Assembly: GCA_030704615.1 (NCBI GenBank)
Contig: CM060731.1
Span: forward strand, 682,001-746,000
Origin: Takakia lepidozioides
Lineage: Eukaryota; Plantae; Bryophyta
Reading direction: 5' to 3'
Length of the DNA: 64,000 bases
Position 1 is the first letter of the stretch, and each line of letters begins with the position of its first letter. The translations under genes and the position numbers were made by a program. The notes under the pieces were generated by a model. It ran no database searches. It was not told the DNA's origin and saw only the letters and a program-made list of their open reading frames with translations. Below are positions 32,063 through 50,585 of the stretch, in pieces.

Positions 32063-33828
32063 GTACATACATCCATCTGATGTACCTCAAGATTTTCAAC
32101 AGCGGTAAACGCTAGAATCACTCGAATCGACTCCATCCGTGCAACAGGGGAGAAGGTTTCATTGTAATCAATACCTTCAATTTGCCAGTAATGGCGATCG
32201 CTTCATTTTCAAAACAATTCCCCTTTGCAACCAAGCGCGCTTTGTACCTTGCTACAGAACCATTTGCATTGTACTTAACCTTGAAAATCCATTTGCAGCC
32301 AACAGACTGTCGTCCAGATTGCAGTCTTATTATCCTGAAGAGACTTAAACTCAGATGTCATAGCTTCCTTCCAGTGTGAAGAGTTCCCACTCCTCATTGC
32401 ATCTGACACACTTTGAAGTTCATCACTGTCAATGAAATAGACAAAAGATACCTTTTGAGGTTTTTCAATCATAGTAGATTGTATCTCCTCCATTTGAACC
32501 TCAACAATCTCTTCAACAATCTTCTGTTTCATTTTATCTTCATGAGTCAGAGCCAAGTTCTTATTTTCATGGTCCAAACTTGGAACTACTGTTTCCTGAT
32601 AAAAGTTCCTGGACTCATTGAATATGACATCACGATTGATGATCACATACTTGCTCTTGAAAGATTATACAACTTATACCATTTGGTTTCTTCACAATAA
32701 CCAATGAAGATACACTTGATTGCTTTTGCATCCAATTACTTCTTTACTTCTTTTGGAACATGGGCAAGTGCAACACACCCAAAGACGCGCAAATGATCAA
32801 CTGAAGGTTTATCACCCTTCCAAACCTCTTCAGGTGTCTTTGTAGAGATTGCCTTAGTAAGAAGTCGATTCTAGAGGTATGTTGCAGTCGCCACTGTTTC
32901 TGCCCAGAAACGGTGGTCCAACCTCATGTGTTGCAACATGTATACACCTCACACTCTCAACAAGTGTTCGATTCTTCCTCTCTGCAACTCCATTCTGTTC
33001 TGGCATATATGGTGTGGTTGATTGTTTCACAATACCATTCTCCCTACAGAACTACTTAAAGTTCTTTGAGATGTACTCACCCCGCCATCACACCGAAGAG
33101 CTTTGATCTTTTCTCCAGTTTGATACTCCACCAAAGCTTTGAATGCCTTGAACCTATCAAGAACTCCAAACTTGTTTTGCATCGTGTAGATAAATGTTTT
33201 CCTGGAAAAATCATTAATGAAGGTCAAGAAATACTTTGCACCTCCATGAGATTCAATTGACATATGACCGCATAGATCTGTATGCACCAGCTCAAGAACC
33301 TTATTTGTTCGAGAACCTCCATCATTTGGAAATGAGTTGCGATGGTGTTTACCGTACACATATCCGTCACAAAAAACTCAAGATCCGATCTCCTGTAAGA
33401 TGCCCTTAACCAGATTGTTAGCTGACATGCATGCCAAACTTTGCATTGAGACATGTCCAAGTCTCTGATGCCAGAGGTCACTCTACTTGAGAGTAGTAGT
33501 ATACTCCGCATGTAAAGCCTGGACAACCCCAACCAGCTTGTACAATCTTGCATCTTTCACCGCCTAAGCTATCACTTCACTGCCAAACTTCACCTAACAA
33601 TGATAACCCTATTTTAACTAATTCTAGACTTTTGGCTTCAATCCGGACCAAACTTAATATGTATTTGAATTAAAATTAATTCAAATTTTGTTAATAATAT
33701 CTTGGATAGTAATGTGTGATTGAACTTTGTGAAATTACAAGTGATGTCATACTTGCTTCAAAATGTAACATAAGATGTCTATTTGACATTGAAGTGCTTG
33801 TGAAGTTGCAGTGTAATTCAACATCCAT

Positions 33829-34194
33829 GGACATTCGGCATTTGGGTGGATGCGATGGTCGGTGCCGACAATCACTTATGTCGGTGCCGCCGATCATCAC
33901 TTTCCGTTTTTTTTTTTTTTTTTTTTTTTTTTTTGACATTCGGCATTTAGGTGGATGTGATGATCGGTGCCGACCATCACTTCAGTTACCGATCACCACT
34001 ATCCGTGTTTTTTTTTTTTTTGGCTTTTTGGCTTTTGACATTCGGCATTTGGGTGGATATGATGGTCGATGCCGACCATCACTTCTGTCAGTGCCGCCGA
34101 TCTTTGTTTTTGGCTTTTGTCATTCGGCATTAGGGCGGATGCGATGGTCGGTGCCGACCATCACTTCTGTCAATATCGCCGATCATCACTTTAT

Positions 34195-34225
<31 letters not shown>

Positions 34226-34625
34226 CCCTCGGCTTTTGACATTCGGCATTTGGGTGGATGTGATGGTCGGTGCCGACCATCACTTCTGTCAGTGCCGCCG
34301 ATCTTTTTTTTTGGCTTTTGACATTCGGCATTAGGGCGGATGCGATGGTCGGTGCTGACCATCACTTCTATCAATATCGCCGATCATCACTTTCTGTTTT
34401 TTTTTTTTTTTTGGCTTTTGGCTTTTGACATTCGACATTTGGGTGGATGTGATGGTCGGTGCCGACCATCACTTCTGTCGGTGCCACCGATCATCACTTT
34501 CCGATTTTATTTATTTATTTTTAAATAAATTTAAGGTGGTTTTTGACATTTGGCATTGGGGTGGATGCGATGGTCGGTGTCGACCATCATTTCTGTCGGT
34601 GCCGCCGATCATCACTTCTGTTTTT
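33829..34625. repeat. Tandem array of ~8 units (82-118 bp), each with a GATGGTCGG-TG-CCGACCATC hairpin and a poly-T tract
   Basis: Units start (G/T)ACATTCGGCA or close variants at ~33830, 33935, 34037, 34120, 34238, 34320, 34427, 34545. Confidence 0.9.
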
Positions 34626-34849
34626 TTTGTTTTCTTTTTGTTCCCCAACTCCCCAACAATGTCAACGTCCACTGGGCAGTGGAGGTTCTACAAAGTGGAA
34701 GAACAAGAAATCATGATGGCATCAAAAAGAATAAAATCATCCACAGTATTTTGAAAAACGAAAGCGGACAACGAATAAAAGTCACCTCGTTGGACTCCTC
34801 TCGAATTCTCTTCCAGTTCATTTCGGGTGGCAAAATTCGCAACATGTTT

Positions 34850-35530
34850 TGTGAGGCATAAGGTCAGTATTGGCATTGATAATGGACATAATGTTCCCCT
34901 CTGCCTGGAGTGTCCCTGGTCGCGGCCGCTTGACGCCACGATTTCCGTGGAAAGATGACAAACAGCCCTCTTTACTGAGCTTTTTGTACGTTGACCTTCC
35001 AATTCCGTGTATTATCTACCATGCTTTCTCACAAACATCAACACCTTCTATCGTAACATACGACATGCGCGATGACCCATCCATAATGTGAAGTCGTTTT
35101 GAAACATTCAATCCAAGTTCTCTCCCCTCATCGAATGACGAACCCCAAAATGCAGTTTGAATTGCCAAGGTTTTTCTCCAATCAAAATACTGGCAGCACT
35201 GAAGCTTGCAGCAAGGTTTGCTGCTCACCGACCTCACTTCATCCAAAGGATGATTTTTCTTGCACTTTTTTTAGTCCTCCATATTGGATGGATTTTTCTT
35301 CCTAGTAAAATGCCTGTATGTTGCTTTCAATACGCCTGTACCATGGTCGTCATTCTCCATGTCACTGCATGATCGTAGGAAATTTTCGAGATCAACGGAG
35401 GGTATCCGGCCATTTTCAAGAAGTCTTGTTTTTGTTAACGGCCATTTCACAATCGACATCAGTGAACCGGACTCTCCAGAGATTGTTCTAGTCGTACTTG
35501 TACGTTAGTAGGACTAGAAGTCTGGCATCA
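34850..35530 (-). pseudogene. N-terminal remnant of a Cys-rich transposase-like protein (Sola-like/DUF7869-associated type, tentative)
   Basis: Single frame with stops: KPCCKLQCCQYF...VTIEGVDVCEKAW*IIHGIGRSTY...HGNRGVKRPRPGTLQAE...DLMPH. Catalytic part absent. Confidence 0.5.
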
Positions 35531-37789
35531 TTATCGTGCGGCTCTGACAGCAGACTCTGGAATAAGCGTGAAGGATGTCGATTCTGACAAGTGGCCTGGA
35601 GAAATGAAGTCAAGCGGCTAATCGCCACAACTAATTCGAGACTGCACATTAACAATCGATCATTATAATTAGCTGGGAGGAATCCGAAGGTGAACCATAA
35701 AGCACTTTGAGATTGTTCTGTTTATATTTATCGTGCTGTTATAGTGAATAAAACACTTGGGCAGGGCGGGGCATTACATGCCGACGCATTGCATTGGACA
35801 GAGAGGGCGGTGCATTACAGGTGTGCGGAATGCTCTGTCGTGCCTTGCTTGCTTGCACATGTTTAATGTAGGGATGGACCCCTCGTGTCGGGTATCCCTC
35901 GATAAATGGGCAGTCCCTATGGTGGCTCTGGACCTTAAATCGAGGAATGCCCGACACGAGGGGCCATCTACTATCCTTAAAACCGTATGTTTGTCAGGGA
36001 ATATTGATGCCTAGCGGCTAACAGCCGAAAGTAATTGTGGACGGCTCAATATGAGACAATGATTATATAGTGCGACAAATCCGTAGGTACAGCGTTGTGT
36101 CCTCTGGCAGATTGAGTTCGAAACGACTGCCTAGGCGTGTCACGTGGGTGGTCACATGTGCGTTTGGGGCGTGGGTTAAGGTTTGTTGGCTTCGAATCTA
36201 TTTTAAGATTTTTGTAAGCGTGAGGGTTGTAGAGTCTGACCAATGGCGTCATTACAATCATTTCGTCTTTTTTTCATTCGTCTATCCAGTCGTATGTCCA
36301 AACGTGTGTGCATTCGTGGAACAAAAGTTGAACTAATTTCATCTGTGTGGATGGACAGTATTAATGTTAGTTTGCGTGGATGGGGCAGAACATCCATTTG
36401 GGCCGCGCGACCGTTCGATTTCGGACGGAGGCGATGGTTCAGATCATCCTTGAAGGTCGCTTATAAGGGGTGCGCTCTTTGAGCCCGGCCTTTGGGCTTC
36501 CCATTTTCTACGCGTAAGCGCTGCGCGAGTGAGAGCTTAACAGTTGAGAGAGGAGAGCGTGAAAGAGAAGAGTTTTGGAGCTCATTTTGCAGCGACTGGA
36601 CACTGGAGCGTGGAGAGAAAGAACAGACTTGGCCAAGTGCAGAGAGAGGAAAGGGTGAAAGGTGAGAGAGTGAAATAGGCGAAATTTGAAGAGCGGGGAG
36701 GAGAGACCGGACAGTGGCGAGTGGAGATTGACGAGTGTAGAGGCGAGAGCACAGTGCAATTACCGGCAGGCGGATGTGCGGAAGAGAGTATCAAACGAAG
36801 GATTGTGGTTGCAGGGGCACCAAAATGGCCGGCACAAGCAGGTGTAGCTTTAAAAACTCCCTCTTTTCGTCTTCTGTTTCACGTTTTGTGTTGGCATGTT
36901 CTGAATTCATGTGTTGGCCTGTTCTCAGTTTTGTGTTGGCCCGCTCTCGATTCATATGGCCTGTTCAAGATTCAATTCGTTTCGATCCTGCTTCATTCTC
37001 TGCTGCACTGCACTGTCTTCAGTGCTTCAGTCCGTGCTTTAGTGCACTTTAGGTTTCTGTTTCATTGTTTGCTTCGTTGTTTGCTTCAATGCTATTTCAT
37101 TCTCTGTCAATTCATTTCACTCTTGCTCCATTCTGTGCTTCAGTGCATTCCTGAGTCATTGCTTCACTATTGTTTTTCAATTCACCGATGGTTTGTAGGG
37201 TGGTTTTGTGTGGTGGTTTTGTGTGCAATTGGGTTTGTGTGTGCTTGTTCTGGTCGATTAGGGTAATGGTTTAGGATGGCGGGAGATTACCGTGCTGGTT
37301 GTATTGCTTGTTTTGTTCATTGTGGTGGTTTATTGAGGACGGTGGTTTCGGAAATGCTCGGATGTTTATTTCTCAACCGTTTTCTTGATCCCCAAATCCA
37401 ACGTTAGTTGATGCATTTCTTCCCATTCAAATTCGATTCTGAATGGAAATTTTCATTTCTTATCCAATTATGTCGAATTCGGCAATTCTGAAAAACCACG
37501 ATAGCCCAGTCTACTTGTATTCTACAGTAGACATATGCTAACAGTAGGCTTCGTGCAGGCCAGAGTAGAGTATTCGTAGACCCATGTCATGCACATGAGC
37601 AACCAAAAACTGGAACCTCCACTGCCCAGTGGAGGTTCGCGTGAATTCTGTATGCGGAAGCTGAAAGGCATTTTTTTAAAGTAAGGACGAAATCGGATAA
37701 TTACGGGAAAATTGAATCAGTTTGAGACGATGTGGGAACGAGTGATGGAATCATATGTGTAACATTGTAGGTGTGACACATACTTTCCA

Positions 37790-38545
37790 ATGAGACTGGG
37801 ATACGATAATTGGGAACCTCCACTACCCAGTGGAGGTTCGATATTTCTTTGGGTTAGCCAGTTACACACTATGATTAGTTTTAATGTTAGAATGAGAAAG
37901 AGGAACGAGGGTGGGGAACCGGTGTCTGACGATGAGTACAAGACAGCTAGATTAAATTGGAGCAAGAGACGGTGTTCAGTAGACGTGATGGAAGCGGACC
38001 GTCCAGATCAAAAACATGGTGTTTCGGAACCAGATGAAAAATCCAGTTGGGGGTCTACCGAGCCGAACAAAGTGTCTGTCAATGACAAAAATGTTACTGT
38101 AGAACCCCCGCGGAACGCATCCGAATCTCCGAGCAATACACCTGAAGTCATCTGTAAGGATACCCTGGCGGAAATAAGAGAAAGCGTTCATGTAAACAAT
38201 GATATCAACGGATCTCCTGCCTACTCCCAAGATTATCCAACATACACCCCTTCAGATCATTCCCCAGACACATTGGCGGCGATACGAGTGACCGTTTTTG
38301 GATATCCAGCATCTCTGGGTTACTCGCCAGCATCTCCTGAATCCACATCAGGATCTGAAAGATATTATCCTCCAAACTTCCTCCTGGACACTGAAACGAG
38401 CGGGGGAGTCCTGGAACTACTGGACGTCTCCGGATCTCCAGGATACTCCCTTGCGTCTCCTGATAGTATCACCGGATCCCCAAAATATACCCCTCCAGAC
38501 TATTCGCCTGATACACTCAGAGAGATAATAAGGAGCATTATGTAG
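37790..38545 (+). CDS. Ser/Pro/Tyr-rich ORF with Pol II CTD-like repeats
   Basis: Contains GYSPASPES, GYSLASPDS, SPAYSQDYPTYTPSDHSPDTL and SPKYTPPDYSPDTL (internal duplication). True start probably MRKRNEG at 37892. Confidence 0.5.
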   Translation: MRLGYDNWEPPLPSGGSIFLWVSQLHTMISFNVRMRKRNEGGEPVSDDEYKTARLNWSKRRCSVDVMEADRPDQKHGVSEPDEKSSWGSTEPNKVSVNDKNVTVEPPRNASESPSNTPEVICKDTLAEIRESVHVNNDINGSPAYSQDYPTYTPSDHSPDTLAAIRVTVFGYPASLGYSPASPESTSGSERYYPPNFLLDTETSGGVLELLDVSGSPGYSLASPDSITGSPKYTPPDYSPDTLREIIRSIM

Positions 38546-38867
38546 TTATTGGGTATATAATCTAGAATCGTCTGAATATAGTGCGAGAAGTTCCTTAGTA
38601 TATTTTGGACGAATTAGATTCGAAGATTTCTATTGTAGATTAGTCATGTTTCAGGATGATGTACTCAATGGCTCCTAAGCCTCATTTTCATTAAAGTTTT
38701 TTTCTTCAACATCTGAAAAAAATGGAGGATTTCGCATTTCATGTGGAAATACTCGTACATACGAACCTCCACTGTCCAGTGGAGGTTCTCATTTCTGGAA
38801 TGATGGATGCTAGTAAGAGAGATCTTGTTATTTGATTATCTAATAAATTTGTGTTTGGTTGTAACAG

Positions 38868-41800
38868 AAGACATCATACACCACCAAATTGCGTCCCGGG
38901 ATTGATTGGAGATATTTGTGGCGCATTCGTATGCCGGAAGTCCTCACATTTCAAAACTGAGCATACCGCTATTTTTGAGCTTAACCCAGAGGTGACAGAT
39001 TGGGGCATCGTGCTTGTCGGTACACCTCCTGATCACAAATTGTCTTTTCATTATAGAAGTCTTGGAGTAATAACAGACTTAAAATACGCAGAAGCTCTCG
39101 ATATAGAGCTTGAATCTGAAGAGGAAAACCCGATGTTGGTTTTGTTCCTGCATGAGGATGCGAGAACCCCCAGGACGTTTGGTTTCAAAGTGGAGGTGGG
39201 TCGTCTGAACAAGTCGTTGATGAGTGAATGCGTTGCACTGGGTTTTAGATTTCCAGACGAGGGCTCTGTATTTACAGACGTAGGTTTGTCGAGGGCCTGG
39301 AGTATTTTTCTGGATCTTCTGCACGCAATGGGGAACGACATTCGCAAGAAACGAGCACTAGAGGAAGCATCAAAGCCGAAGAGGGAAAAATGCAAGCCGT
39401 CGACAGCCGGCAATGATGACAATGAGGCCGGGACTTCCGCAGGAAAGAAGAAACAGAAGGAGGATCAGGATCCAGCATTGATGTCAGATAACAAGAGACC
39501 TAAAGCTAGGGAGATTTTTGACAAGGAAAAATGCGAGAAGATGGAGGAGAGGCTCAAGAAAGAATACAATGATGTATTTCCATTCGGATTCGAGAGTACC
39601 TTCCTTGTGAAGGTTTCCATGATGGAACTAGCTCCAAGGAGCATGGTTTACAGGCCGTTAAATATCAAGCATAAAGACGAAGTGAAAGCGCGACTCTTCC
39701 AACTTCATTTGTTCAACTCCAAACATCCGGTGTATCTTGCGCCAATCAACCCTTCCAATCCCGAGAAGATTGCTTCATCGCGACCGAAGCAATGGAAGGA
39801 GATGGACGTATCAAGGTTCTTCGTAATTGGTGGACAACACACCATCGTGGCAGCAAAGGTAATGGACTGCATTTCCTCCCAGACCTCTCTTTTAACGAAC
39901 CTCCATTGGGCAGTGGAGGTTGGTGTTGAACTACAAAATTGGATATGTCCCTACACTTTCAACTCTCTCACCCATTTTACATTAACTGTAGCAGGAACTT
40001 CTCGAGGATCTTTCCGATAGCGAACTGAAGGAGTACTACCGGAAGTGGCATGTGAAGATTGTATGGTCTACCGATGAACAAAAGCTCCTGAAGTTGTCAT
40101 AGCTCCTCAACGATCCCAATAAGGCGCAAAAGTTTGATACAACAATGCCGGAGAAAGTTGCGCATGCGCGAATGTTATTCAACCTGAGGGGGAAGCCAAG
40201 GAAATACAACGATCGTACCACAAAGTCCGAGACGAAACAATGGAAGGTATGCATTTATGGAATCAAAATCTACTATTCACATTCATTTTATGCTAAAGAA
40301 TACTTCTGTTGTCGAAGTGACAACTAATTTATCCTTGAATGAATGTGCAGGAGTTCATGTTTGCCTGTCATTTGATACTAGAAATGGGTAGCATTAAGGA
40401 GGCAATGGTCCTGGTACTTTGCGACGACGACGTTTGGAAGATCTGGGAAGATGTTTTCAAAAACTGGGAGCAGGGAAAGCTACTCGACGCTTGGGATACA
40501 GTACAAGGGTGAACAGCAACAGCTCACGAAATCTGCTATCGCAAAGCTACAAGGGTTGAACAGATGGCAGCTGATAAAAGTTGTGCAGAAAATCCTGGAC
40601 CTGAAATTGACCATTCGAGATTACAAAGGTCAAGACAAATCAATTCAAGGCATGAATAAGTACATAGACGACATGAAAATGCGCCGGTTTATTGTCGACG
40701 ATGTGATGGAAGTGTTGGGGTGGCCTCGGATGAGCAAACAATGCACGGAACCGTACACGAAGGACGAGTGGCGTGAAGTGAAGAGAAAGTAACACTTCAA
40801 TAAGGCAGAGTTCTCAACATTTAAAGACAAACTGGGGACGGATTACATCCAAAGCAAGATCAAGATGAACAGCCAGCGTGGTTGACGCCACATCATTTCC
40901 AAAGGCATGGACCTATAACCGCGGACAGAAGGTATGTGCCTATTTCCGCGGAATGATTTCTCCTTTCTAGTCATTACAGACTACATCTTTAACATCGTGC
41001 CGATCGATTGGATGAATGTAGGATGGATGAATATAACATTGATGAGTGCAAACAATGCGAAGGATTCATGAATGCACGATGGTTGAATGTAGAATGGATG
41101 AATGTAAGGGGAATGAGTGCGAACACTGCGATGGATTGATGTAGTTTTTTTTCCCTGAAAGCAATTTCGAACTTTGTTGGATTTCCTATCTTTCAATATC
41201 ATGTGGGGCCATGTCAACCCGTGAATGTGTGTTTTGTAATTAGTCATTCCGTTCGTACTTGGGACAAATGAACAGTCGCAGCAAGTCAAAATACTTTTAT
41301 GAAGATGAAGAAAGAGTACATAGAAATTTTAAAGGTCAATTTGACTCGGACTCATCATAATATATCCCCGCGTCCTCTGCATCCAAATCCAAAAAATTCA
41401 TAATTTCAGATCTGGGATGTCTACCCCCACGTGCAGATATTCTGGGATCAGGTGATGGAGCCTCGGACATGCGAAGTGTCATTTCTTCTGCATACACAGG
41501 AAGCAAAAACTGGGCAGAGGGCTGTCGAATACGGAATCGGTTTGTGATCCCAAGTGAAGATCCGACCACATGTGGAGATCCGGACACATGTCAGGATCCG
41601 ACCACATGTCGAGATAATCAGGATTCAGGGACACCGCTCAAGTGTTTTCCCTCCATGAACATATATTTTGTGTACTTGCGAACTCGCAAACCCAATGCAA
41701 TTCCCAACATGTCAATTCACAAAACATGAGAATGTGATAATCGGCGGCGATCATCACATTCCCTACAGAGAGTGACTGCTGATGGGAATTCTACTACCTC

Positions 41801-43813
41801 ACAAGTACCACTTTGAAGAAGGTCTAAATGTGACGATCGCCGCCGATCATCACATTTTCTTGAAGATTTCAGTTTCAATCGGGAAATGTAGGACTGAAAC
41901 ACGAAAACAAAACGATACAATTCACATTTTTGGGCGAAATGAAGATTTCTCTACATTCACACACAACAGTTTGAGTGATATGCAGCCCTAAGATCATGTT
42001 TTGATGGACAACTAACTTTGCAAGGGGGGAAAGATGCACGACTTAAACACGAAAGCAAAATAATGTGAACCACATTTCTGGCCGAAATGAAAAATACTCT
42101 GGAAAATCTTGAAGCACTGTAAGTGATGATCGGCACCGATCATCACTTCTATTTTGTTTTTTTAAATAAAAATTAAATATTTTTTAAAATTTATTTATTT
42201 AAAAATTAAAAGAAAAATACGGGGAAAAAAAAAAATAGTGCAGAAGTGATGATCGGTCCCGATCTTTGTTTTTTTTTTGGTTTTTTTTTGTTTAGGAAAA
42301 ATACGGGTTTTTTTTTTTTTTTTTTTTTCTTATTGTTCCAAAAAAAAAATTTGCTCTGGTTTGGTGTTTTGGTAGAGGTAGTCGATCATCTCTTCTGAGA
42401 CAAAACCACTCACGGCTGCTTTTGTTAAGTACGTCTCCTCCATCAAGAAAGCTTATGAGGATAGAGAAGATGCCATGGCAATTATTTCAGCGAGTTTCAA
42501 GACTCATTACGCTATCATGGGTGGAGAAACAAAATTCGCCGATGCCAAGTCCCGTCTGCGACTCGCACCGAAGAAACGGTTTGACAACATAGCGATGGTG
42601 TTCGTCAATACAGTTTCTGAAGACGACTATGTCGTATTTGAGTCCAACGATTATGTGAACATAATGGAGGCCTTTGTGGCTCAGAATATGAACACGAGTG
42701 CTTTTGTTTTCTTCTCGACGCAACCGTCCTCGGCCAATCTGGTCTCCTACATCCGAAATGGTCCCGGAAGAACATCGTATCTTGTCCGTCAGGGATTTTA
42801 TGTTCCGGGAGAGTATGAAAATATTTACAAAAACAGCAAGAAGACTTTCTCTCGGACTGTACTGTGCCTGGACTATGTTTTTCCAGCGACACCTGAGGAG
42901 ATGCAGAATCCGGACGAGCACATCTCCACCGTACTGTTAATCGAGCCAATACAGCCGATTCTGGAAGGGCCCTCTGAGAAGCCATCAGTTTTCCCTGTTT
43001 TGTCGAGACGGGATGTCCGTTGTCAACATCTTCGGAGGCGTGATGTTGACGTACGCCCTTCATGTAAGTGTAAAAAAAAAATACATTTTAAATACGAATT
43101 TTACATTTTTGATCCAACACGTCTTCTGTTTTACTGACTGGGTTTATTTGCAGGCAAGAAACATTCGAGTGCTCGACATCAACCACTCAACCAAGAAAAA
43201 GTTTTGCAAAAAAAAAGTTGAAGCTAATTTTAAGAAGCTTCAAACTGAGAATGACAATGTTGCTGAAGAGGATGACGGCGGAGACGATGATGAGGATGAG
43301 GAGGAGGAAGATGAAGACTTGGAAGAAGGAGGCGGACATTCCGAACACGTATAGGAGGACGAGGGCATCGATGGTAACGGGGACAACGAGGGCCACGATG
43401 GTGACAATGCAGACCGTTGGGAGGCTGGACACCTGGATGTGATTCAGGACTTCAGAACTCAGTCACAGGATGGTATTGAGAACATTACCCAAGACGTTGC
43501 GGTCCACAATGTCGTGATTCTGGATGGGGATTCGTCGAGTTCAAGCGAGAGAACTAAGAGTAATCCTGCTTCACCATCAAGGGGTGCGGAGGCGAGCTCA
43601 ATCGAGGTGCGCGGCAATTTGATTGGGAGTGCAGACGACTGGTTCAAACCTATAGAAGGGGACGAGCCGGCCGCAAAAATGGACAGTGGTGACAGAGGCA
43701 GGACTAAAAACCCGTCTCCAAAAAAAAACAGCGGAGGCAGAGGCCGAACTCAGAGCCCAACTCGCTCTCAAAGTGTCTCCCAGCATGTCAATTTGGATGC
43801 AGATAACGAATGA
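38868..43813 (+). pseudogene. Multi-exon gene: ParB/Srx-like domain plus degenerate amino-methyltransferase-like C-terminal domain and acidic tail
   Basis: Exons ~38868-39858, 39995-40246, 40351-40931, ~42376-43063, 43154-43813. ParB-like RPLN...FFVIGGQHTIVAAK. MTase motif I-like LFCRDGMSVVNIFGG...ARNIRVLDI. Several stops and frameshifts. Confidence 0.55.
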
Positions 43814-44316
43814 CACCTGGAGATTTATGGTGTCTTCAAGCATTATAAATAGAACAAATTGTGTGTATTGCATCTGGTTGTGTTCTGGTTGTGTTTTTGG
43901 CAATACCTGATCTGTATCTTAACATTTCCCACATTCTTGAACTTTACATGTGACTGACGGTAAGAAAACTCGTATAGATCCATGAACGAAAATTGGAGGA
44001 AATCACACAAACCCGGACAGAATCCATCGCAACTCAAACAGTGAGGAGGCAGGTGGACTTAACAATAAGGGCCAGCCCAACTGATCCGGTCAAACAAACA
44101 ACCTCCACTGCCCAATCGACGTTGCGAGATGGAGGAGATGAGTCGAAGATGGTCGTTGCTCACCGCGAAGGAAAAGAGAGCGAGCAGCACCATCAACAAA
44201 TTCGGAACCCCTCCCCGAAACGGGTATACACCTCATAACCATCTTAGCTATGTTCTTCTTTGTCGTTCTTCTAGTTTTCAAAATAAATTAATTGTTCTAT
44301 TATTCCACAGGATGAT

Positions 44317-45048
44317 ATGATTCACCCTCCAATCGACTATGACAAATCTGTGAACCCACAGGATTGGTATCGCCTCTCTGAGGGACCGAAAGGATCTCGA
44401 CCAGGATACTACGTCCTGGTTCTTGACGTCGGTTACCTTGGTGAGGTTTACATCCGAGATGGCCCGAGATCCCCTCCCGCAACCCATCCTTGTGTGTGCA
44501 CTAGAAAATTCAAGCTTGCAGTCCGAAATGGGTTGGACGACTTCCTGAAATGGGTCCTTAAGCATTTTGAGGTCTACTTTTGGAACACTGGACCGTTAGA
44601 AAATGTCCTGGATATAGGGCTGGCTTTGTTTGGAAGAAGGTTTTACAAGGTCAGGGAATTCAGCAATGAGAACTGCGTGAAGCATAGACAAACATTCAGT
44701 GCCGAATGGCCCAAATATCCGAAAACGCCAATATATCTTAAACGTCTCTACGACATTTTCACTGTAGACGACCTTGTAGCGTACAAATCAAACACACTTC
44801 TTATCGACACTGTAGAAAATATGTATAAGTCATACTTGAACCCAAAGTCGCTCGGTATCTTCCTTCCAAAATATAAAGCGCTCGTCGACCCATACAAGGA
44901 CATGTGTCTTCTTGGTGAACTCAAACCGCACCTGGAAGAGTTGCGGTTATCCGGAAAAGACGTTGATATATTCAACGTGGAAAAACCCATAGGATGTCCA
45001 CCGTATAATGACCCAAAGGTCAAATGCCTCTTGCTATGGGATTTGTAG
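44317..45048 (+). CDS. FCP1-like/NIF HAD phosphatase domain protein, copy 1 (degenerate motif I)
   Basis: VLVLDVGYL...VRNGLDDFLKWVLKHFEVYFWNT...NENC...YLKRL...SNTLLIDT...KSYLNP. Confidence 0.7.
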   Translation: MIHPPIDYDKSVNPQDWYRLSEGPKGSRPGYYVLVLDVGYLGEVYIRDGPRSPPATHPCVCTRKFKLAVRNGLDDFLKWVLKHFEVYFWNTGPLENVLDIGLALFGRRFYKVREFSNENCVKHRQTFSAEWPKYPKTPIYLKRLYDIFTVDDLVAYKSNTLLIDTVENMYKSYLNPKSLGIFLPKYKALVDPYKDMCLLGELKPHLEELRLSGKDVDIFNVEKPIGCPPYNDPKVKCLLLWDL

Positions 45049-45164
45049 TGACAGGTTTATCTTAGAAAACAAAAATTTCCTAACGCTTCATTGGAACAGT
45101 TTGAAACGTAGATGACTGCTCTAGATTTTCATGAACCTCGACTGTCCAGTGGACGTTTCTCCCA

Positions 45165-45959
45165 ATGTCAATCCTGTCTTTGGTTTATCTTGATTACCAC
45201 TTGAGTGGATGTATGAATTTCTCACAAATCGCAGCACCAGTTTCTCCAGTTGCGAAAGGATTGCGCTTGATAATTTTTGACATGAATGGAGTTTTGTGCA
45301 AAGTCTTGAAGCACCAGAAGAGCTACTGTGTCCCCCGAATGTCCGAGACAGACTACAAGATACTAGCTCTTGTTGGATTTCGACTTGTCTATAGGCGGGA
45401 AAAATATCGTGAGATGTGGACAGAGTTGAACAAACATTTCCGTCTAGGTATATGGAGCTGCATGATGTACAAGAACTTGCAGCCTATACTGGACTTTATG
45501 CTTCGGGGTCTTCCTCAGCTGGCATTCGTTATGTCTCAGGAAGATTGTATCTCATGTCCTACTTCTGTCTACCCTCAATTTATATCAGGATACGACCCGC
45601 CGAGTCTGTTCTTGAAGCCATTGATGACGGTCTGGCAAAGATTTGGTGGTCAGTACAACCTGAGTAACACTCTACTTATTGACGATTCAACTATTAAGTG
45701 TGTGTTGAACCCGCCTGAATCCTGCTTGATTCTAAAATCGTTTGAATCCGTTGAGACAGACTCTTGCTATCTCCATAAGGTTCTTCAGAAATATTTGCTT
45801 GGAATGAAGAAATCTCACACGATTTCTAGTTATCTCAGGGAAAAGAGGATAGGACTTAAGCCTTGTCAGAATGTTTCCACCGATCCCAAGTTTGAGCCTC
45901 TCCTGGATTATGTTGATGATTCTAATTACGGGAATATCCGATATGATGCTTCAAGATAA
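45165..45959 (+). CDS. FCP1-like/NIF HAD phosphatase domain protein, copy 2
   Basis: LIIFDMNGVL...HFRLGIWSC...FVMSQEDC...FLKPLMTVW...NLSNTLLIDDSTIKCVLNP. Confidence 0.85.
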   Translation: MSILSLVYLDYHLSGCMNFSQIAAPVSPVAKGLRLIIFDMNGVLCKVLKHQKSYCVPRMSETDYKILALVGFRLVYRREKYREMWTELNKHFRLGIWSCMMYKNLQPILDFMLRGLPQLAFVMSQEDCISCPTSVYPQFISGYDPPSLFLKPLMTVWQRFGGQYNLSNTLLIDDSTIKCVLNPPESCLILKSFESVETDSCYLHKVLQKYLLGMKKSHTISSYLREKRIGLKPCQNVSTDPKFEPLLDYVDDSNYGNIRYDASR

Positions 45960-47607
45960 AGATTTTATTGATCAACCACGTCTGTGATTCAATGTTTATT
46001 TTTGATTGGTTTTTTTTATAGGTTGTATTGTTTTTCTAGAAAAACTGTTGTGTACTGTGATTTACTTTTCAATCTGAATTGACATGGAATTGTTTGCTAT
46101 TTCCTAGTTTCATCCAAGCGTTTCTCCACCCCATACCATCCCGATCCTCTGAGATACAGGCCTTCTCCGAAACTCGTCTCGGGGGCTTTTTCAAATCCGA
46201 CAACCTCCACTGTGCAGTGGAGGTTATCCCGTGTCTATACATTGACCTTGTAAGTTCGTTTCTGCAGGTTCATGGCGATGCTGCCGATGCCAATTTCTTG
46301 TCGGGACCTCCATTGGAATCCTCCATATCATAAATTCGTCTACAGAGGGACAACATTCACACTACTATTGAGATTTCTGTCATCGACGGTGAAGCATCAT
46401 CCAGGCACTTGGCTTCCCTTCAATTGCATGACCCTCTTCTTCAGTCCATTCCTGAAAAAGATGTTATGTCGCAAGATTGTTTAGGATTGAATGTCAAAGA
46501 TGGAAGCCAACTTGACAAATGTGCAGGGGATTTCGTGGACCTCACTCTACAATCCTCACGCTCCGTGTTAAGTGTCAATGGTGTGAAATCTACCTCGAGA
46601 ATGTCATCCGTTGAGGACGCGGCTGAGGCTGCGGCTCTGCAGCACAATGTTGCCTCTCTTCCCTCCTTCTCTCCACAGCACGAAGGTTGGACAGCCCAAA
46701 TCAGAAGAAGTCAGGTAAAATTACTTATATCTGAATTCTAACTCGTCCTTTTGTTTTCCTTAGTACTGGGTCTGATGTTCTTGTTTTACTCCAGGCCAGA
46801 AAATCTACGGATTGTGACCTTCCTATCAAACGACGTCTTTATTGGAAATCTGTTCCGAGGTAATCCCTTCGTTATGTGTGAATTCCATTCAGGATGTGGA
46901 GTGCTCAAGGGACAATTTCCATTCCGTTCCCCTTCTCCGAAACCCTTTCGACGAGGACAAAGACGAAACTTCAATTGCAACTTCTGGGCTTCCCGACCCT
47001 GCAGTGTTGGCGCAATGTTCTGCACCGAGGAAGCGGAATAGGGCCCCCAAACCATTTCCATCTCTTCTACAAATTGGTTCCACCGGAGAGAAGTCCTTCG
47101 TCAGAGACAAAGCAGACTCGAGGAAGAAAATGAATACCTCGGATTTACCGGGGTCTCGTCAAAACACGTCCATTGGAATGCCAAGCCCGCCATCGAGACT
47201 TCCAATAAGGCGACATCGGTATTATTTGATATCATTTCTCCACTTTTTTCTTTTTTCTGTTCGTTTGGTTATGCACTAATTAACTCCATCTTTTCTCAAC
47301 AGGCAGGGATGCAGCACGATACCTTCATCAATTTCCCTCCGTACAAGGTACTTTCCTGAACCTCCACTTGGTAGTCGATGTTCCTCTTCTTAGCAATATT
47401 AACCCTCCTCTTCAAACATTCCAAGCCCACAACATTGTGCAGTATTTTGCCATTTTCTACACAATCGTGTTGATCTTCCATACACTCAATCATTCTGGGT
47501 CGTGGGTATTTTTCATGGCAGAAACACTAATGACAGTGTGTGATTAACCTGCTCAGGATAACTTTGTCTCTCATCCTTTACATGCAACAGCGGGGAAGAG
47601 GAAACAG

Positions 47608-48304
47608 ATGTTGTTAGTTTTGAGTGTCAACGGACTCTTCTGCTACCGGCCACCCCCAACCGGCGGTGAACTATTTAAGGAGAAATTTCGTTTCAGGAAT
47701 GTGACACTTCAAGTTCCTGACAGACCATTTGTGGTGCCTCGGCGTGGAGTCTTGGAGTTTCTGGACCTTGCATTGAAGCATTTTCACGTGGCCATTTGGT
47801 CATGTGCTGATAGAGGTGTTCTTTGTAGGATGTTGGAGAGCTTCGTCCCTAAGAAAATAACGAAGAAGTTTTGCTTCATATGGTCTGCTGAGGATTGTAA
47901 GGATACCACCGGTTATATCAGGCCCGAGATGAAATATCTCGTGAAGGATATTCGAAGTGTTATTGTCTGGTATCCTGGTAGACCATTTGCTACGCAGGGG
48001 CAAATACTTCTTGTAGATGATGAGCCATCAAAAGGCCTGTGAAACCCACAAAATACTGGATTCTTCCCTTTCTCATTCAAGCCTTCACCAAACGGATTGC
48101 ATAACCGGGATGATATGACAAAAGCAGTATGGCCATATATATTGGAGATGGCTGGAGCTTCAACAGTCGTTGATTACATTAGCGAGAACCGGGCAAAGTG
48201 TTCTCATAAACCTATTGATCGAGACCATGCCTGCTGGGCCTGGTATGGAAGATATCTTGATCCTCGTATTTGGAACCCACAACAAAAGGAACCTGATTAC
48301 CTTG
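47608..48304 (+). pseudogene. FCP1-like/NIF HAD phosphatase domain, copy 3 (one in-frame TGA, nucleophile Asp lost)
   Basis: LLVLSVNGLF...PRRGVLEFLDLALKHFHVAIWSC...FIWSAEDC...LVKDI...ILLVDDEPSKGL*NPQNT. ORF 48097 continues in the same frame. Confidence 0.75.
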
Positions 48305-50585
48305 GTAGGCACGTGGATCCCACTCTTCTCTTGTTTGTTCATAATTTGATTTTCCAATTCTTTTGCAGCTGCATTTGCACTCTTACCTCAACATATCCAT
48401 ATGCAAAACTTCCACTTTGGGCCCAACATTTGTCATTTCCATCGCCTCTCCCCAGTTACATTCAAGGAACGAATTCTAAAAGAGGAACAAGAGCTGCGTG
48501 ATTGGGAAGAATGGCGGGCGTGCCGGGAAGCTTCAAGGGCATCAAGTAGAGTTGGCAGTAACATTTCAGATGACAATGTCAGCCGGTTTCACCTTCCTGA
48601 AAGTATCTCCGTGTCCTCTGGAGCGGAGACCGTTGCAAGTGGCTGTGGTAACCGGAGGCGTCTTCGGACACATGCCTTGACTGCGAGCCGTTTGGGAGGA
48701 GGCTCAGTATTATTAATGAGTTAGTATAAGTCGTAACGGTTCTATGGCTTCAGAATCTATGGCTTGTATGGCATTAAGTCCATGAACGGATGGACAGTTG
48801 ACGTTCATTTTTCTGTTGGTCCATCGCCTTGAATGATATAATCTCAAATAAAATATGAATGTTTAATATCATCAATCAGGTCCCAACAGACTCGTTTTTC
48901 CATGTCTCTTCGTCACATGCCATCATTGTTTCATATTTGGTTCTGCCATTATTCCATGCTTGTTTCTGTATGTCATTTTGGATATCGGAGCTCTCATCAT
49001 TGTTTGATTCATTGCATCCTCCCATTCCTTTTAATGAACGTTAACTTGGCAGTGGATGTTCATCTAAGACCACAATACATACTTGTATTTTTGCGTAGAA
49101 TGTGTGGAGGATTACATAATTTGTTGTTATATAGTGCACAAATAGTCAAATAATTATAGATATATCTCTTTATTTCTATTATAGATTATAATTATTCATA
49201 TATCTTATATTATTTCTGGACCAAACAAAAGTCCAGAATTAGTTAAAATAATGTTTGATTGGTAGAGAATTCAATCGTAAGACCTTACTCAGTTAGCTGA
49301 CTAACTGACAATAAGTTCTTTGTCAATCCAGGAACAAAGAGAACTCCTCCGATCTCCTTCGACACTCCAGATGATAATTGAAACATAACAGTACCTTTTC
49401 CATGGATATCAAGACTAGTACTGCTATCTCCAAGATACACCTTATTTCCCACAGAAAGTTCTTTGAAGGTTGAGAATGCTTCATTCTGGAACGTCATGTG
49501 CTGAGATGCCCCTGAATCAATGAACCACACATCTCTGCAACTCGTAGAGATTGACAAAGCTACAACAAGAAGTTTAGTCCTTTCAGCCAATGCTGAAACC
49601 TCTTATTCTTCTCATCGTCTAGCTTTTTCTTGAAGCAGTCACGTGCATAGTGACCTCTCATGCCACAAAAGAAACAGGCTCCATGTTTCTTCTTCTTGAT
49701 CTTAGTCCCTTTCTTTGCAAAATTAACCATTACCTTCTAAGACTTTGAACTTCCTGAAGTCTTGACATTCAATGCCATTGTATCATGACTTCTACCAAAG
49801 ACATGATTCTCTCGTTTGCAACGCATCTCTTCTTGCAATAATTGTCTTGTAACTAGGTCCATAGTCAGACCACTAGTATGTGTACCAAAAGATACTACCA
49901 ATGTCTGATATGAAGGTGACAAACTTCCAAGAAGAATAAATGTCAGATCTTCATCTGAAACTGGATGACCAATGCTGGACAAATGATCACTAATGATTTA
50001 GAGCTTATCAATGTGATCCTGCACTGAGTTTCATTCCTCCATTTTTAAGCTATATAACTCCTGGTTAAGATATAGCCGATTGACAACATGCTTCCTCTCA
50101 AAACTAACACAAAGATTATTCCATGTTTCTCTAGCGGTTTTTGCATGTGCAACATGATGATGTAAAGAATCTGCCACATTCAACAACATGGTTCCTTGAG
50201 CCAACTTATCTTTCTTCGCAAAAAGTTGTCGCTCAGGAGTCAACCCTGCGGCTATGATCTCTCCATCTTCAGGTTGCAGTTGAACTGGTGCAACCGCTTC
50301 TCCTGATGTGATCTCCCACAGATCTTTCTCATTAAGAATGAACTTTATCTTAATCTTCCATGTATGAAAATTGTGACCATCTAACTTCTCCACTCGGGTA
50401 TGATCAGCAGAAGGTGCCATGATGCTAGTTTGATGCTTTGCCAATTATAAAACACCCTCAAACTTCAGATCTAACTCCAAGCACTCAAGCTTTCAGATCT
50501 AAACCCAAGCACTCAAGCCTATTGGTTATAAATCAAATGTTCATCTCATTCTATCTCTCAGACAGAACCTTGTTTTGATACCATG

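What the first reader, a model, noticed from the sequence alone, without database searches (positions are those of the whole stretch)
33600..49255. Cargo-rich ~15.6-kb DNA element: ParB/MTase-like gene, three CTD-phosphatase-like ORFs, CTD-mimic ORF and private palindromes (candidate TE anti-silencing or chromatin system)
Seen: a discrete insertion splits a Copia pol frame and is bounded by 25-bp inverted repeats. It carries a minus-strand transposase-like remnant and, divergently on the plus strand, a YSPxSP-repeat ORF, a spliced ParB-like/methyltransferase-like gene and three FCP1-like HAD ORFs. At least 10 copies of one 24-bp palindrome are spread across it. Known: Arabidopsis VANDAL elements encode VANC proteins that bind motifs within their own element to undo silencing; ParB proteins load at palindromic parS sites; FCP1/SCP phosphatases act on the Pol II CTD. 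Inference: the cargo may be a co-adapted module in which an element-encoded protein recognises its own palindromes and alters local chromatin or Pol II phosphorylation. I do not know of a described plant TE with this gene set. This copy is decayed.
Basis: partly seen in the sequence, partly recalled or inferred. Interest (0 to 1): 0.92.

Follow-up and report, generated by a model that had tools for sequence, protein, structure and literature searches.

The report
Sola-type transposon with ParB-like helper genes
This is a decayed, transposase-less copy of a giant cut-and-paste transposon from a moss-like plant that carries a conserved helper-gene set (ParB-like, apparently dead DNA-methylase-like and dead CTD-phosphatase-like parts) plus its own palindromic DNA tags; the basic design was reported in algae in 2025, but nobody has yet tested what it does.

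Summary
A 15,651-bp element (33605-49255) has 30-nt inverted ends. Removing it with one copy of a 4-bp duplication (TGAT) restores the reading frame of the Copia retrotransposon it split.

It carries:
- three ORFs above Pfam's NIF threshold;
- a ParB/Srx-fold exon (weak but one-sided fold matches);
- a methyltransferase-like part;
- a Ser/Pro/Tyr-rich ORF;
- a 140-residue transposase remnant on the other strand;
- two private palindromes (10 and 11 copies, none expected by chance).

The cargo is not a one-off capture. An unrelated contig (L008) has ParB-like, N4/N6-methylase-like and NIF-like ORFs in the same order. Another relative (L004 family) has its own, different dispersed palindrome.

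The catalytic motifs of the methylase-like and all three phosphatase-like parts are degenerate. A binding or scaffolding role is therefore more likely than enzyme activity.

It is best read as a Sola-type (probably Sola1) transposon. A ParB-methyltransferase gene opposite the transposase was published for Ectocarpus Sola1 in 2025. The phosphatase-like domains and dispersed palindromes in a land plant look undescribed.

This scan has already found this design many times on other DNA of the same genome. Mechanism is untested.

The parts
33601..33604 (.). Target-site duplication TGAT, left copy
   Evidence: Same 4 bases at 49256-49259; removing the element plus one copy restores the Copia frame
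33605..33634 (+). Left terminal inverted repeat (30 nt)
   Evidence: 27/30 complementary to 49226-49255; the core occurs only at these two places in the window
33830..34660 (.). Left subterminal tandem array: about 8 units of 82-118 bp, each with palindrome B and a long T run
34663..34688 (.). Palindrome A, copy 1, at the point where the transposase remnant is cut off
34821..35246 (-). Transposase-like N-terminal remnant (Cys-rich CCxxxCC...F, then HGNxG). It has an in-frame stop at 35016-35018, and the catalytic core is missing
   Evidence: no match in Pfam, NCBIfam or the Atlas
37613..37839 (.). Palindrome A, copies 2 and 3 (37613-37638 and 37814-37839), at the head of the plus-strand gene block
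37790..38545 (+). Ser/Pro/Tyr-rich ORF of 251 aa, with one YSPASP and three DTL-x-x-I repeats
   Evidence: (no family)
38763..38788 (.). Palindrome A, copy 4, 60 nt upstream of the ParB-like ORF
38851..39880 (+). ParB/Srx-fold exon (the ORF runs on to 40020); conserved core with a GGQH motif at about 39520-39870
   Evidence: 19 HMMER relatives; fold matches to KorB, ParB-N, Srx, SerK, SbnI, PadC and SspE and to GmrSD_N and ParB_N
39897..39922 (.). Palindrome A, copy 5, in the inferred intron after the ParB exon
   Evidence: the next exon follows in register with relatives
40103..40260 (+). Next exon of the ParB-like gene (conserved A-R-x-x-F/W...GKP stretch)
   Evidence: Collinear with P0011 (E 2e-4) and P0018 (E 0.011) just after their GQH motif
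41734..42146 (.). Three copies of palindrome B inside the gene's long inferred intron
42568..43096 (+). N4/N6 amino-methyltransferase-like part in two frames: 42568-42960 with N-T-V-S where (D/S)PP(Y/F) is expected, and 42941-43096 with a motif-I-like F-G-G
   Evidence: Aligns to L008 protein P0035 at the expected segments. P0035 has 25 of 30 Atlas neighbours in PF01555, and PF01555 is its only Pfam hit, below threshold
43013..43810 (+). Acidic, low-complexity tail after the MTase-like part
   Evidence: L008 and L005 have the same kind of tail
44099..44123 (.). Palindrome A, copy 6 (degenerate), upstream of NIF ORF 1
44317..45048 (+). NIF/FCP1-homology ORF 1 (243 aa); motif I reads L-D-V-G-Y
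   Evidence: Pfam NIF 3.6e-8
45133..45158 (.). Palindrome A, copy 7, 7 nt upstream of the ATG of NIF ORF 2
45165..45959 (+). NIF/FCP1-homology ORF 2 (264 aa); motif I reads F-D-M-N-G
   Evidence: Pfam NIF 7.1e-10; 35% identical to the L008 NIF ORF, E 9e-18
46201..46226 (.). Palindrome A, copy 8
47358..47382 (.). Palindrome A, copy 9 (degenerate), upstream of NIF ORF 3
47608..48300 (+). NIF/FCP1-homology ORF 3, broken by an in-frame stop at 48040-48042; motif I reads L-S-V-N-G
   Evidence: Pfam NIF 1.1e-6; read-through alignment to the L008 NIF ORF
49036..49060 (.). Palindrome A, copy 10 (degenerate), near the right end
49226..49255 (-). Right terminal inverted repeat
49256..49259 (.). Target-site duplication TGAT, right copy

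Best explanation
What it is: the region is a non-autonomous, decaying copy of a giant Sola-type (probably Sola1) cut-and-paste DNA transposon. It inserted into a Copia element with a 4-bp duplication.

What it carries: on the strand opposite its truncated transposase it carries the lineage's own helper-gene block.
- A spliced gene has a ParB/Srx-fold domain (GGQH motif, nearest in fold to the DGQHR/DUF262 branch), a beta-class N4/N6 DNA-methyltransferase-like domain without the catalytic (D/S)PP(Y/F) motif, and an acidic tail.
- It is followed by NIF/FCP1-homology domains without an intact DxDxT motif. Here there are three old, diverged paralogous ORFs.
- A Ser/Pro/Tyr-rich ORF sits upstream of the block.

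Shown: the boundaries, the domains, the degenerate motifs, the conserved gene order in a distant relative, and palindromes that are private to each family and sit in introns and just upstream of ORFs at roughly 1-kb spacing.

Inferred: the helper protein binds the element's palindromes as a dimer and so tells its own family's DNA from the rest. Its non-catalytic methylase-like and phosphatase-like modules then act as DNA/chromatin-binding and phospho-CTD-binding parts. These would keep the family's genes transcribed or shielded from silencing. Palindrome B in the subterminal array may instead, or also, serve the transposase.
For: Transposon identity:
- TIRs and a 4-bp TSD that restores the Copia frame.
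- A 4-bp TSD is the Sola hallmark (PMC3627910).

Domains:
- NIF above Pfam's threshold three times.
- For the ParB fold, 9 of the 15 best of 48,161 chains are ParB/Srx-fold proteins, Z 4.2-2.1. The two best Atlas shapes are GmrSD_N (TM 0.52 by row) and ParB_N.
- 19 HMMER relatives share FF-I-x-GQH.

Conserved module:
- L008 has ParB-like 553 aa, then a 578-aa MTase-like ORF, then a NIF ORF, on one strand within 5 kb.
- Matches to the window are ParB 8.5e-11 and NIF 9e-18, 9e-13 and 3e-5.
- L001/L002 also have a ParB-like exon with a NIF-like ORF 3 kb downstream.

MTase-likeness: 25 of 30 Atlas neighbours are PF01555. PF01555 is the only Pfam hit, at the motif-I end of the profile, E 0.03.

Palindromes:
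- 0 expected by chance; 10 and 11 copies seen.
- None in JGI metagenome contigs.
- The L004 family has 4 copies of a different 23-nt palindrome inside its ParB-like gene region, 0 expected.

Published parallels: Ectocarpus Sola1-1_Ec32 has a ParB+MTase gene opposite the transposase. Red-algal ParB-fusion genes sit next to inverted-repeat arrays.
Against: - The transposase remnant could not be assigned to Sola or any other superfamily. The catalytic core is absent here.
- The ParB fold rests on a middling model (pLDDT 66.7) and low Z scores. Foldseek found nothing significant, and no sequence library recognises the domain.
- The MTase fold was not confirmed; the single-sequence model failed at pLDDT 32. 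The window's own MTase-like exons match L008 only weakly (E 0.19).
- No helix-turn-helix or other sequence-specific DNA-binding domain was identified.
- Nothing shows that any protein binds the palindromes.
- No RNA evidence exists.
- No sister copy could be read, so selection on the ORFs was not measured.
- In L001/L002 the same kinds of ORFs lie near CACTA transposase domains, so the module is not tied to one superfamily.
Confidence: 0.6

Rival explanations
1. The palindromes serve transposition or RNA processing, not the helper protein. They would be transposase-binding subterminal or internal sites, or hairpin signals in transcripts (terminators, processing or small-RNA sources). On this reading the ParB-like gene has an unrelated role, for example in DNA repair after excision.
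For: Palindrome B forms a classical subterminal tandem array beside the left TIR. All the palindromes fold as strong hairpins as single strands, z from -4.7 to -6.6. No DNA-binding domain of the helper protein was identified.
Against: Palindrome A is spread through the interior at about 1-kb spacing, in introns and before ORFs. It is not concentrated at the ends, and the right end has no array. The 2 central bases vary freely while the arms are kept, as at sites for dimeric proteins. ParB-like genes travel with private palindromes in elements of different transposase types: the L004 family here and red-algal Plavaka. There is no Rfam match.
Confidence: 0.2
2. The cargo is an accidental mosaic. 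Host gene fragments and nested pieces of other transposons accumulated in a dead element (Pack-type capture), with no joint function.
For: The copy is decayed: truncated transposase, an in-frame stop in NIF ORF 3, a frame change in the MTase-like part. NIF-type genes with a D-L-N motif also exist as ordinary host genes, such as L007 next to AOX. In L001 the same ORF types sit near CACTA transposase domains.
Against: The same gene order occurs in L008 at only 27-35% identity, which means long joint inheritance. Five ORFs of 243-394 codons survive in a 15.6-kb element. No close host gene was found for any cargo ORF. The three NIF ORFs are 25-28% identical to each other, so they are old paralogues and not recent scraps.
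Confidence: 0.07
3. The helper proteins are active enzymes. The MTase-like domain would write N6-adenine or N4-cytosine marks at or near the palindromes, and the NIF domains would dephosphorylate the Pol II CTD, as the first reader and the algal papers suggest.
For: Published reading for the Ectocarpus protein. A motif-I-like SAM-binding stretch is kept. The first Asp of the NIF motif is kept in ORFs 1 and 2.
Against: The catalytic (D/S)PP(Y/F) is replaced in both the window (N-T-V-S) and L008 (D-T-T-S). The second Asp of DxDxT is absent in all three NIF ORFs and in the relatives P0033 and P0034; the first is absent in ORF 3.
Confidence: 0.13

Closest known systems
Sola1-1_Ec32 of Ectocarpus (giant Sola-1 transposon with a ParB plus N4/N6-MTase accessory gene; PMC12477816, 2025)
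   Same: It is a giant TIR element. The helper gene has a ParB-like domain followed by a bacterial-type DNA amino-methyltransferase-like domain, and it is transcribed from the strand opposite the transposase. The authors also propose that the protein binds and modifies its own element.
   Different: The passages of the algal paper that I read (term search) do not mention NIF/FCP1-like domains or dispersed palindromes. Here the MTase catalytic motif is lost, three NIF-like ORFs and a Ser/Pro/Tyr-rich ORF are added, and the host is a land plant. The transposase here is only a remnant, so kinship of the transposases was not tested.
Plavaka (KDZ/CACTA-like) elements of Bostrychia with accessory gene PAG3 (ParB-like plus 2OG oxygenase) and adjacent inverted-repeat arrays (bioRxiv 10.1101/2025.02.11.637652; Curr Biol 2025)
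   Same: A transposon-borne ParB-like fusion protein sits beside arrays of element-specific inverted repeats, and self-binding is proposed.
   Different: It has a different transposase superfamily and a different partner domain (2OG oxygenase rather than MTase-like plus NIF-like). Its repeats are in tandem arrays next to the gene, not also spread at kb intervals.
Bacterial and phage ParB-methyltransferase fusions (ParB_N with PF01555 N6_N4_Mtase) and DGQHR/DUF262 ParB-like NTPases (DndB, SspE, GmrSD N-terminal domain)
   Same: Domain order is ParB-like then permuted beta-class amino-MTase. The GGQH motif resembles DGQHR/DGQQR. The best fold matches are to this superfamily.
   Different: This gene is eukaryotic and spliced. 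The Arg of the motif is absent in this copy (GGQHT). The MTase catalytic motif is lost. NIF-like domains and an acidic tail are added.
VANC anti-silencing proteins of Arabidopsis VANDAL (Mutator-like) elements
   Same: The idea only: an element-encoded protein that recognises short motifs spread over its own family and counteracts silencing.
   Different: No sequence or fold relation was found or tested. The transposon superfamily differs, and the sites here are 26-bp palindromes.
CACTA (En/Spm) elements with TnpA-type accessory genes, including NIF-domain versions noted by this scan in the same genome
   Same: These are large two-gene TIR elements with subterminal repeat arrays. NIF-like domains occur in transposon accessory genes, and L001/L002 show ParB-like and NIF-like ORFs near Transposase_21/DUF4218.
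   Different: The ends here do not start with CACTA/G, the TSD is 4 bp not 3, and the transposase remnant has no Transposase-associated, Transposase_21 or DUF4218 match.

Membership tests
Sola superfamily (Sola1) DNA transposon | 4-bp target-site duplication | tested here: met
   TGAT at 33601-33604 and 49256-49259. Only removal of the element plus 4 bp restores the Copia frame. The 4-bp TSD as a Sola feature is taken from PMC3627910.
Sola superfamily (Sola1) DNA transposon | Terminal inverted repeats | tested here: met
   30 nt, 27/30 complementary. I had no Sola1 terminal consensus to compare with.
Sola superfamily (Sola1) DNA transposon | Sola-type DDE transposase | tested here: inconclusive
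   Only about 140 N-terminal residues remain. They match nothing in Pfam, NCBIfam or the Atlas, and no reference Sola transposase was on hand.
CACTA / En-Spm | CACTA/G termini and a 3-bp TSD | tested here: not met
   The ends start AACCC and AACAT, and the TSD is 4 bp.
ParB/Srx fold superfamily (Pfam clan ParBc) | The fold of the ParB N-terminal domain | tested here: met
   Model pLDDT 66.7. Matches are KorB Z 4.2, SerK 4.1, pNOB8 ParB-N 3.2, Srx 3.0 and 2.6, SbnI 3.0, PadC 3.0, Atu1540 2.3 and SspE 2.1. Atlas gives GmrSD_N TM 0.52 by row and ParB_N. The scores are low but one-sided; Foldseek alone found nothing significant.
ParB/Srx fold superfamily (Pfam clan ParBc) | Gly-rich nucleotide-binding motif with Arg (GxxRxxA, GGCHR or DGQHR) | tested here: inconclusive
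   GGQH is kept across 19 relatives. The next residue is T, S, M, I or N, not R.
ParB/Srx fold superfamily (Pfam clan ParBc) | Pfam, NCBIfam or PDB sequence match | tested here: not met
   No hit.
N6_N4_Mtase (PF01555, beta-class amino-MTase) | Catalytic (D/S)PP(Y/F) motif | tested here: not met
   N-T-V-S in the window and D-T-T-S in L008 at the aligned position.
N6_N4_Mtase (PF01555, beta-class amino-MTase) | SAM-binding motif I (FxGxG) at the C-terminal end of the permuted domain | tested here: inconclusive
   F-G-G in the window, Y-S-G-G in L008 and Y-S-G-S in L005. Pfam gives 13-15 bits against a cut-off of 26.7, at profile positions 164-207 of 221. 25 of 30 Atlas neighbours are PF01555.
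N6_N4_Mtase (PF01555, beta-class amino-MTase) | Rossmann-type MTase fold | tested here: inconclusive
   The single-sequence AlphaFold model has pLDDT 32 and is unusable.
NIF / FCP1-SCP phosphatases (PF03031) | Pfam gathering threshold | tested here: met
   33.7, 39.2 and 28.8 bits against 21.8.
NIF / FCP1-SCP phosphatases (PF03031) | Catalytic DxDx(T/V) motif | tested here: not met
   L-D-V-G-Y, F-D-M-N-G and L-S-V-N-G. The relatives P0033 and P0034 have D-L-N.
RNA polymerase II CTD mimic | Tandem YSPTSPS-type heptads | tested here: not met
   One YSPASP and scattered near matches; there is no heptad array.
VANC-type anti-silencing factor | Homology to VANC | not tested
   No VANC sequence was on hand, and no cargo ORF matched any named family other than NIF.

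The most novel reading that the evidence does not exclude
Land-plant giant transposons of several superfamilies may share a self-recognition and self-activation device. In it, a ParB-fold protein dimer would read family-specific palindromes placed before each of the element's genes and in its introns. Its disabled methylase-like and CTD-phosphatase-like modules would hold DNA and the phosphorylated Pol II tail. The family's copies would then stay transcribed, or escape silencing, without any enzyme activity. This would be a transposon-encoded, sequence-addressed transcription or anti-silencing factor built from dead bacterial and host enzymes.
Probability: 0.25. Interest if true: 0.85.

Novelty: new variant of a known kind. 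Interest (0 to 1): 0.5.

Why it matters
If the helper protein does read the family's own palindromes, these elements would give a compact, testable system for how a transposon tells itself from the rest of the genome and resists silencing. The system is a protein, a 26-bp site and a reporter in moss protoplasts. It would also be an example of dead enzymes (methylase, CTD phosphatase) reused as binding modules.

The published algal cases stop at domain annotation. The land-plant versions add the phosphatase-like domains and the dispersed, family-specific sites, which make the idea directly testable.

This copy is broken and adds little beyond exact boundaries, a clear palindrome map and three diverged NIF paralogues. 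The scan already holds many sister findings.

Tried and rejected
Searches that found nothing useful:
- The word-index homologue search with the 389-aa ParB ORF found nothing. The same search with the L008 578-aa ORF found only itself. With NIF ORF 2 it found only two distant proteins.
- Pfam, NCBIfam, PHROGs and PDB sequence searches gave nothing for the ParB-like, MTase-like, Ser/Pro/Tyr-rich and transposase pieces.
- The Atlas feature search on the transposase remnant was uninformative, best score 0.76.
With the ParB ORF it found no relative in metagenome contigs.
- The exact palindrome A pattern has no match in metagenome contigs.
- A look-up of earlier findings by the transposase remnant's sequence was blank, which means nothing.
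- There is no Rfam family in the element.

Structure:
- Foldseek against the PDB with the ParB model found nothing significant.
- The single-sequence AlphaFold model of the MTase-like domain was unusable at pLDDT 32, so no fold search was run on it.

Reads and expression:
- Hence there was no read-based test of splicing, copy variation or dN/dS. No RNA run held the stretch.

Readings rejected:
- CACTA identity, because of the ends and the TSD.
- A virus-like element, because there are no capsid, polymerase or packaging genes.
- A true CTD mimic.

Full report
**Boundaries and host**

The element runs from 33605 to 49255 (15,651 bp). Its ends are 30-nt inverted repeats, 27 of 30 complementary. 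The 25-nt core occurs only at these two places in the 64-kb window, with none expected by chance.

TGAT stands on both sides, at 33601-33604 and 49256-49259. When the element and one TGAT are cut out in silico, the minus strand reads through the junction in one frame. That frame has the usual Copia pre-integrase pattern. Cutting out the element alone shifts the frame.

The flanks are Copia. On the right side are gag (Retrotran_gag_2, 2e-19) and Pol_BBD (4e-25). On the left is the integrase core (3.5e-8), all on the minus strand. The insertion is therefore real and discrete, with a 4-bp target duplication. The ends do not begin with CACTA.

**Repeats**

Palindrome A has 12-nt arms around two free central bases. 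There are seven copies with at most 3 mismatches and ten at looser identity. All lie inside the element, and none is expected by chance.
- The copies sit at 34663, 37613, 37814, 38763, 39897, 44099, 45133, 46201, 47358 and 49036.
- Apart from two long gaps of about 3 and 4.2 kb and one close pair 201 bp apart, they are about 1 kb apart. They lie just upstream of ORFs, or in what homology says is the intron after the ParB exon.
- The central dinucleotide varies (CC, TC, GG, TG) while the arms are kept.
- The five copies in the left half are better kept than the five in the right half.

It has 11 copies. Eight lie in a tandem array of ~100-bp units with long T runs beside the left end (33830-34660). 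Three lie at 41734-42146, inside the long gap between the ParB-like and MTase-like coding parts. The right end has no such array.

Both palindromes fold as strong hairpins as single strands. No Rfam family matches the element.

**Coding content**

Three plus-strand ORFs pass Pfam's NIF threshold: 44317-45045, 45165-45956 and 47608-48039.
- The third continues in frame past a stop at 48040.
- They are only 25-28% identical to one another, so they are old paralogues.
- The catalytic DxDx(T/V) motif reads D-V-G, D-M-N and S-V-N. Two distant relatives have D-L-N.

The 394-codon open frame at 38836-40017 matches no Pfam, NCBIfam or PDB sequence.
- A full HMMER pass over 1.84 billion representatives gave 19 relatives for residues 200-340. 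They share a Y-R-P-L stretch and FF-I-x-GQH.
- An AlphaFold model built on that alignment has pLDDT 66.7.
- An exhaustive structural comparison put KorB, serine kinase SerK, pNOB8 ParB-N, plant and human sulfiredoxin, SbnI, PadC, Atu1540 and SspE among the 15 best of 48,161 chains (Z 4.2 to 2.1).
- A shape search of the ESM Atlas put GmrSD_N and ParB_N first and second.
- The scores are low, and Foldseek alone was silent. But the hits are one-sided, so I accept a ParB/Srx fold, nearest in motif to the DGQHR/DGQQR branch.
- A following exon (40103 onward) aligns in register with relatives. This places palindrome A copy 5 in an intron.

The transposase-like piece on the minus strand (35246-34821) is Cys-rich and carries one in-frame stop. 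It ends where the left array begins, and nothing I could search recognises it.

The Ser/Pro/Tyr-rich ORF (37790-38545) has one YSPASP. Its real repeat is a DTL-x-x-I motif that occurs three times. It is not a heptad array.

**Is the cargo a module?**

Contigs that encode the relatives answer this.

L008 is a 6.8-kb Logan contig with 33% G+C. On one strand it has three ORFs in a row:
- a 553-aa ParB-like ORF;
- 47 nt later, a 578-aa ORF;
- then a NIF ORF (Pfam 1.3e-7).

Its ParB part matches the window at 8.5e-11. Its NIF ORF matches all three window NIF ORFs at 9e-18, 9e-13 and 3e-5.

The middle ORF of L008 looks like an N4/N6 methylase:
- It has a clear motif-I-like stretch.
- 25 of its 30 nearest Atlas clusters are PF01555 N6_N4_Mtase.
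- PF01555 is its only Pfam hit, below threshold, at the motif-I end of the profile (E 0.03).
- At the position of the catalytic (D/S)PP(Y/F) it reads D-T-T-S.

The window's 42568-42960 aligns there with N-T-V-S (E 0.19, weak). A second frame (42941-43096) holds the motif-I-like F-G-G. The MTase-like reading is therefore probable but not proven. My one attempt to fold it failed (pLDDT 32).

L001/L002 are AT-rich plant-like contigs. They also have the ParB-like exon with a NIF-like ORF 3 kb downstream, there near CACTA transposase domains.

The L004/L005/L010-12 family has a ParB-like gene 29% identical to ours. It carries four copies of a different 23-nt palindrome inside the gene region, none expected by chance. 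Our palindrome A has no exact match in JGI metagenome contigs.

So gene order is conserved over deep divergence. Each family has its own palindrome in the same kind of place.

**What is known**

A 4-bp duplication is the Sola hallmark (PMC3627910).

The 2025 Ectocarpus transposon survey describes the 21.5-kb Sola1-1_Ec32. It carries a 1104-aa ParB plus N4/N6-MTase gene on the strand opposite the transposase. The authors propose that such proteins bind and modify their own element, and they cite green- and red-algal cases (PMC12477816).

The Bostrychia genome paper describes ParB-2OG-oxygenase genes beside inverted-repeat arrays in Plavaka elements.

I found no paper on land-plant versions, on NIF-like domains in this gene set, or on kb-spaced palindromes. 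The 2016 review of eukaryotic adenine methylases does not list it.

This scan's own earlier notes report the same design many times in this genome, in Sola-like and Mutator-like elements. One is a 15.6-kb copy 164 kb upstream of this window. I treat these as leads. The parts I could test here agree with them: the fold, the dead motifs, the gene order, and a second family's palindrome.

**Reading**

The element is a transposase-less, decaying copy of a giant Sola-type transposon with its lineage's helper block.

Because the catalytic motifs of the MTase-like domain and all NIF-like domains are lost, I favour binding roles. In this reading a ParB-fold protein recognises the family's palindromes, and the dead enzyme modules hold DNA or the phosphorylated Pol II tail. 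The effect would be to keep the family expressed or unsilenced.

Only the anatomy is shown; binding, expression and effect are inferred. The chief rival reading is that the palindromes serve the transposase or act as RNA hairpins.

**Limits**

- There is therefore no evidence from reads on splicing or on variation between copies.
- Sola membership rests on the duplication length, the ends and the layout, not on the transposase.

Noticed in passing
L004:2589-5897 (also L005, L006, L010-L012): A different ParB-like gene family, from JGI metagenome contigs of about 44% G+C, carries four copies of its own 23-nt palindrome (GTTATCCTCGA-N-TCGAGGATAAC). Two lie just after the ParB exon. None is expected by chance.
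   Followed up: partly
L001:9971-18548 and L002: On AT-rich plant-like contigs, a ParB-like exon and a NIF-like ORF (D-L-N motif) lie on one strand. They sit 4-8 kb from minus-strand CACTA transposase domains (Transposase_21, DUF4218). The module may also ride in CACTA elements, or two elements may be nested here.
   Followed up: partly
L007:3281-4180: A NIF-family protein with L-D-L-N-R in place of DxDxT sits among ordinary genes (AOX, DUF3419) on a gene-dense contig. The 'D-x-N' NIF branch therefore also exists as a host gene, a possible source of the transposon's domain.
   Followed up: no
window:32278-33600 and 49260-50444 (minus strand): The host of the insertion is a decayed Copia element (gag, Pol_BBD, integrase) with several in-frame stops. 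Its own ends were not mapped.
   Followed up: partly
window:35300-37600: About 2.3 kb between the transposase remnant and the plus-strand genes has no long ORF. It holds a CT-rich low-complexity stretch with 22-23-bp tandem repeats (36874-36948). It could be promoter or leader, or a decayed nested piece.
   Followed up: no
window:46409-47279: Two Ser/Pro-rich ORFs (110 and 145 aa) with no family match lie between NIF ORFs 2 and 3, each downstream of a palindrome A copy.
   Followed up: no
It was kept out of all later searches.
   Followed up: no
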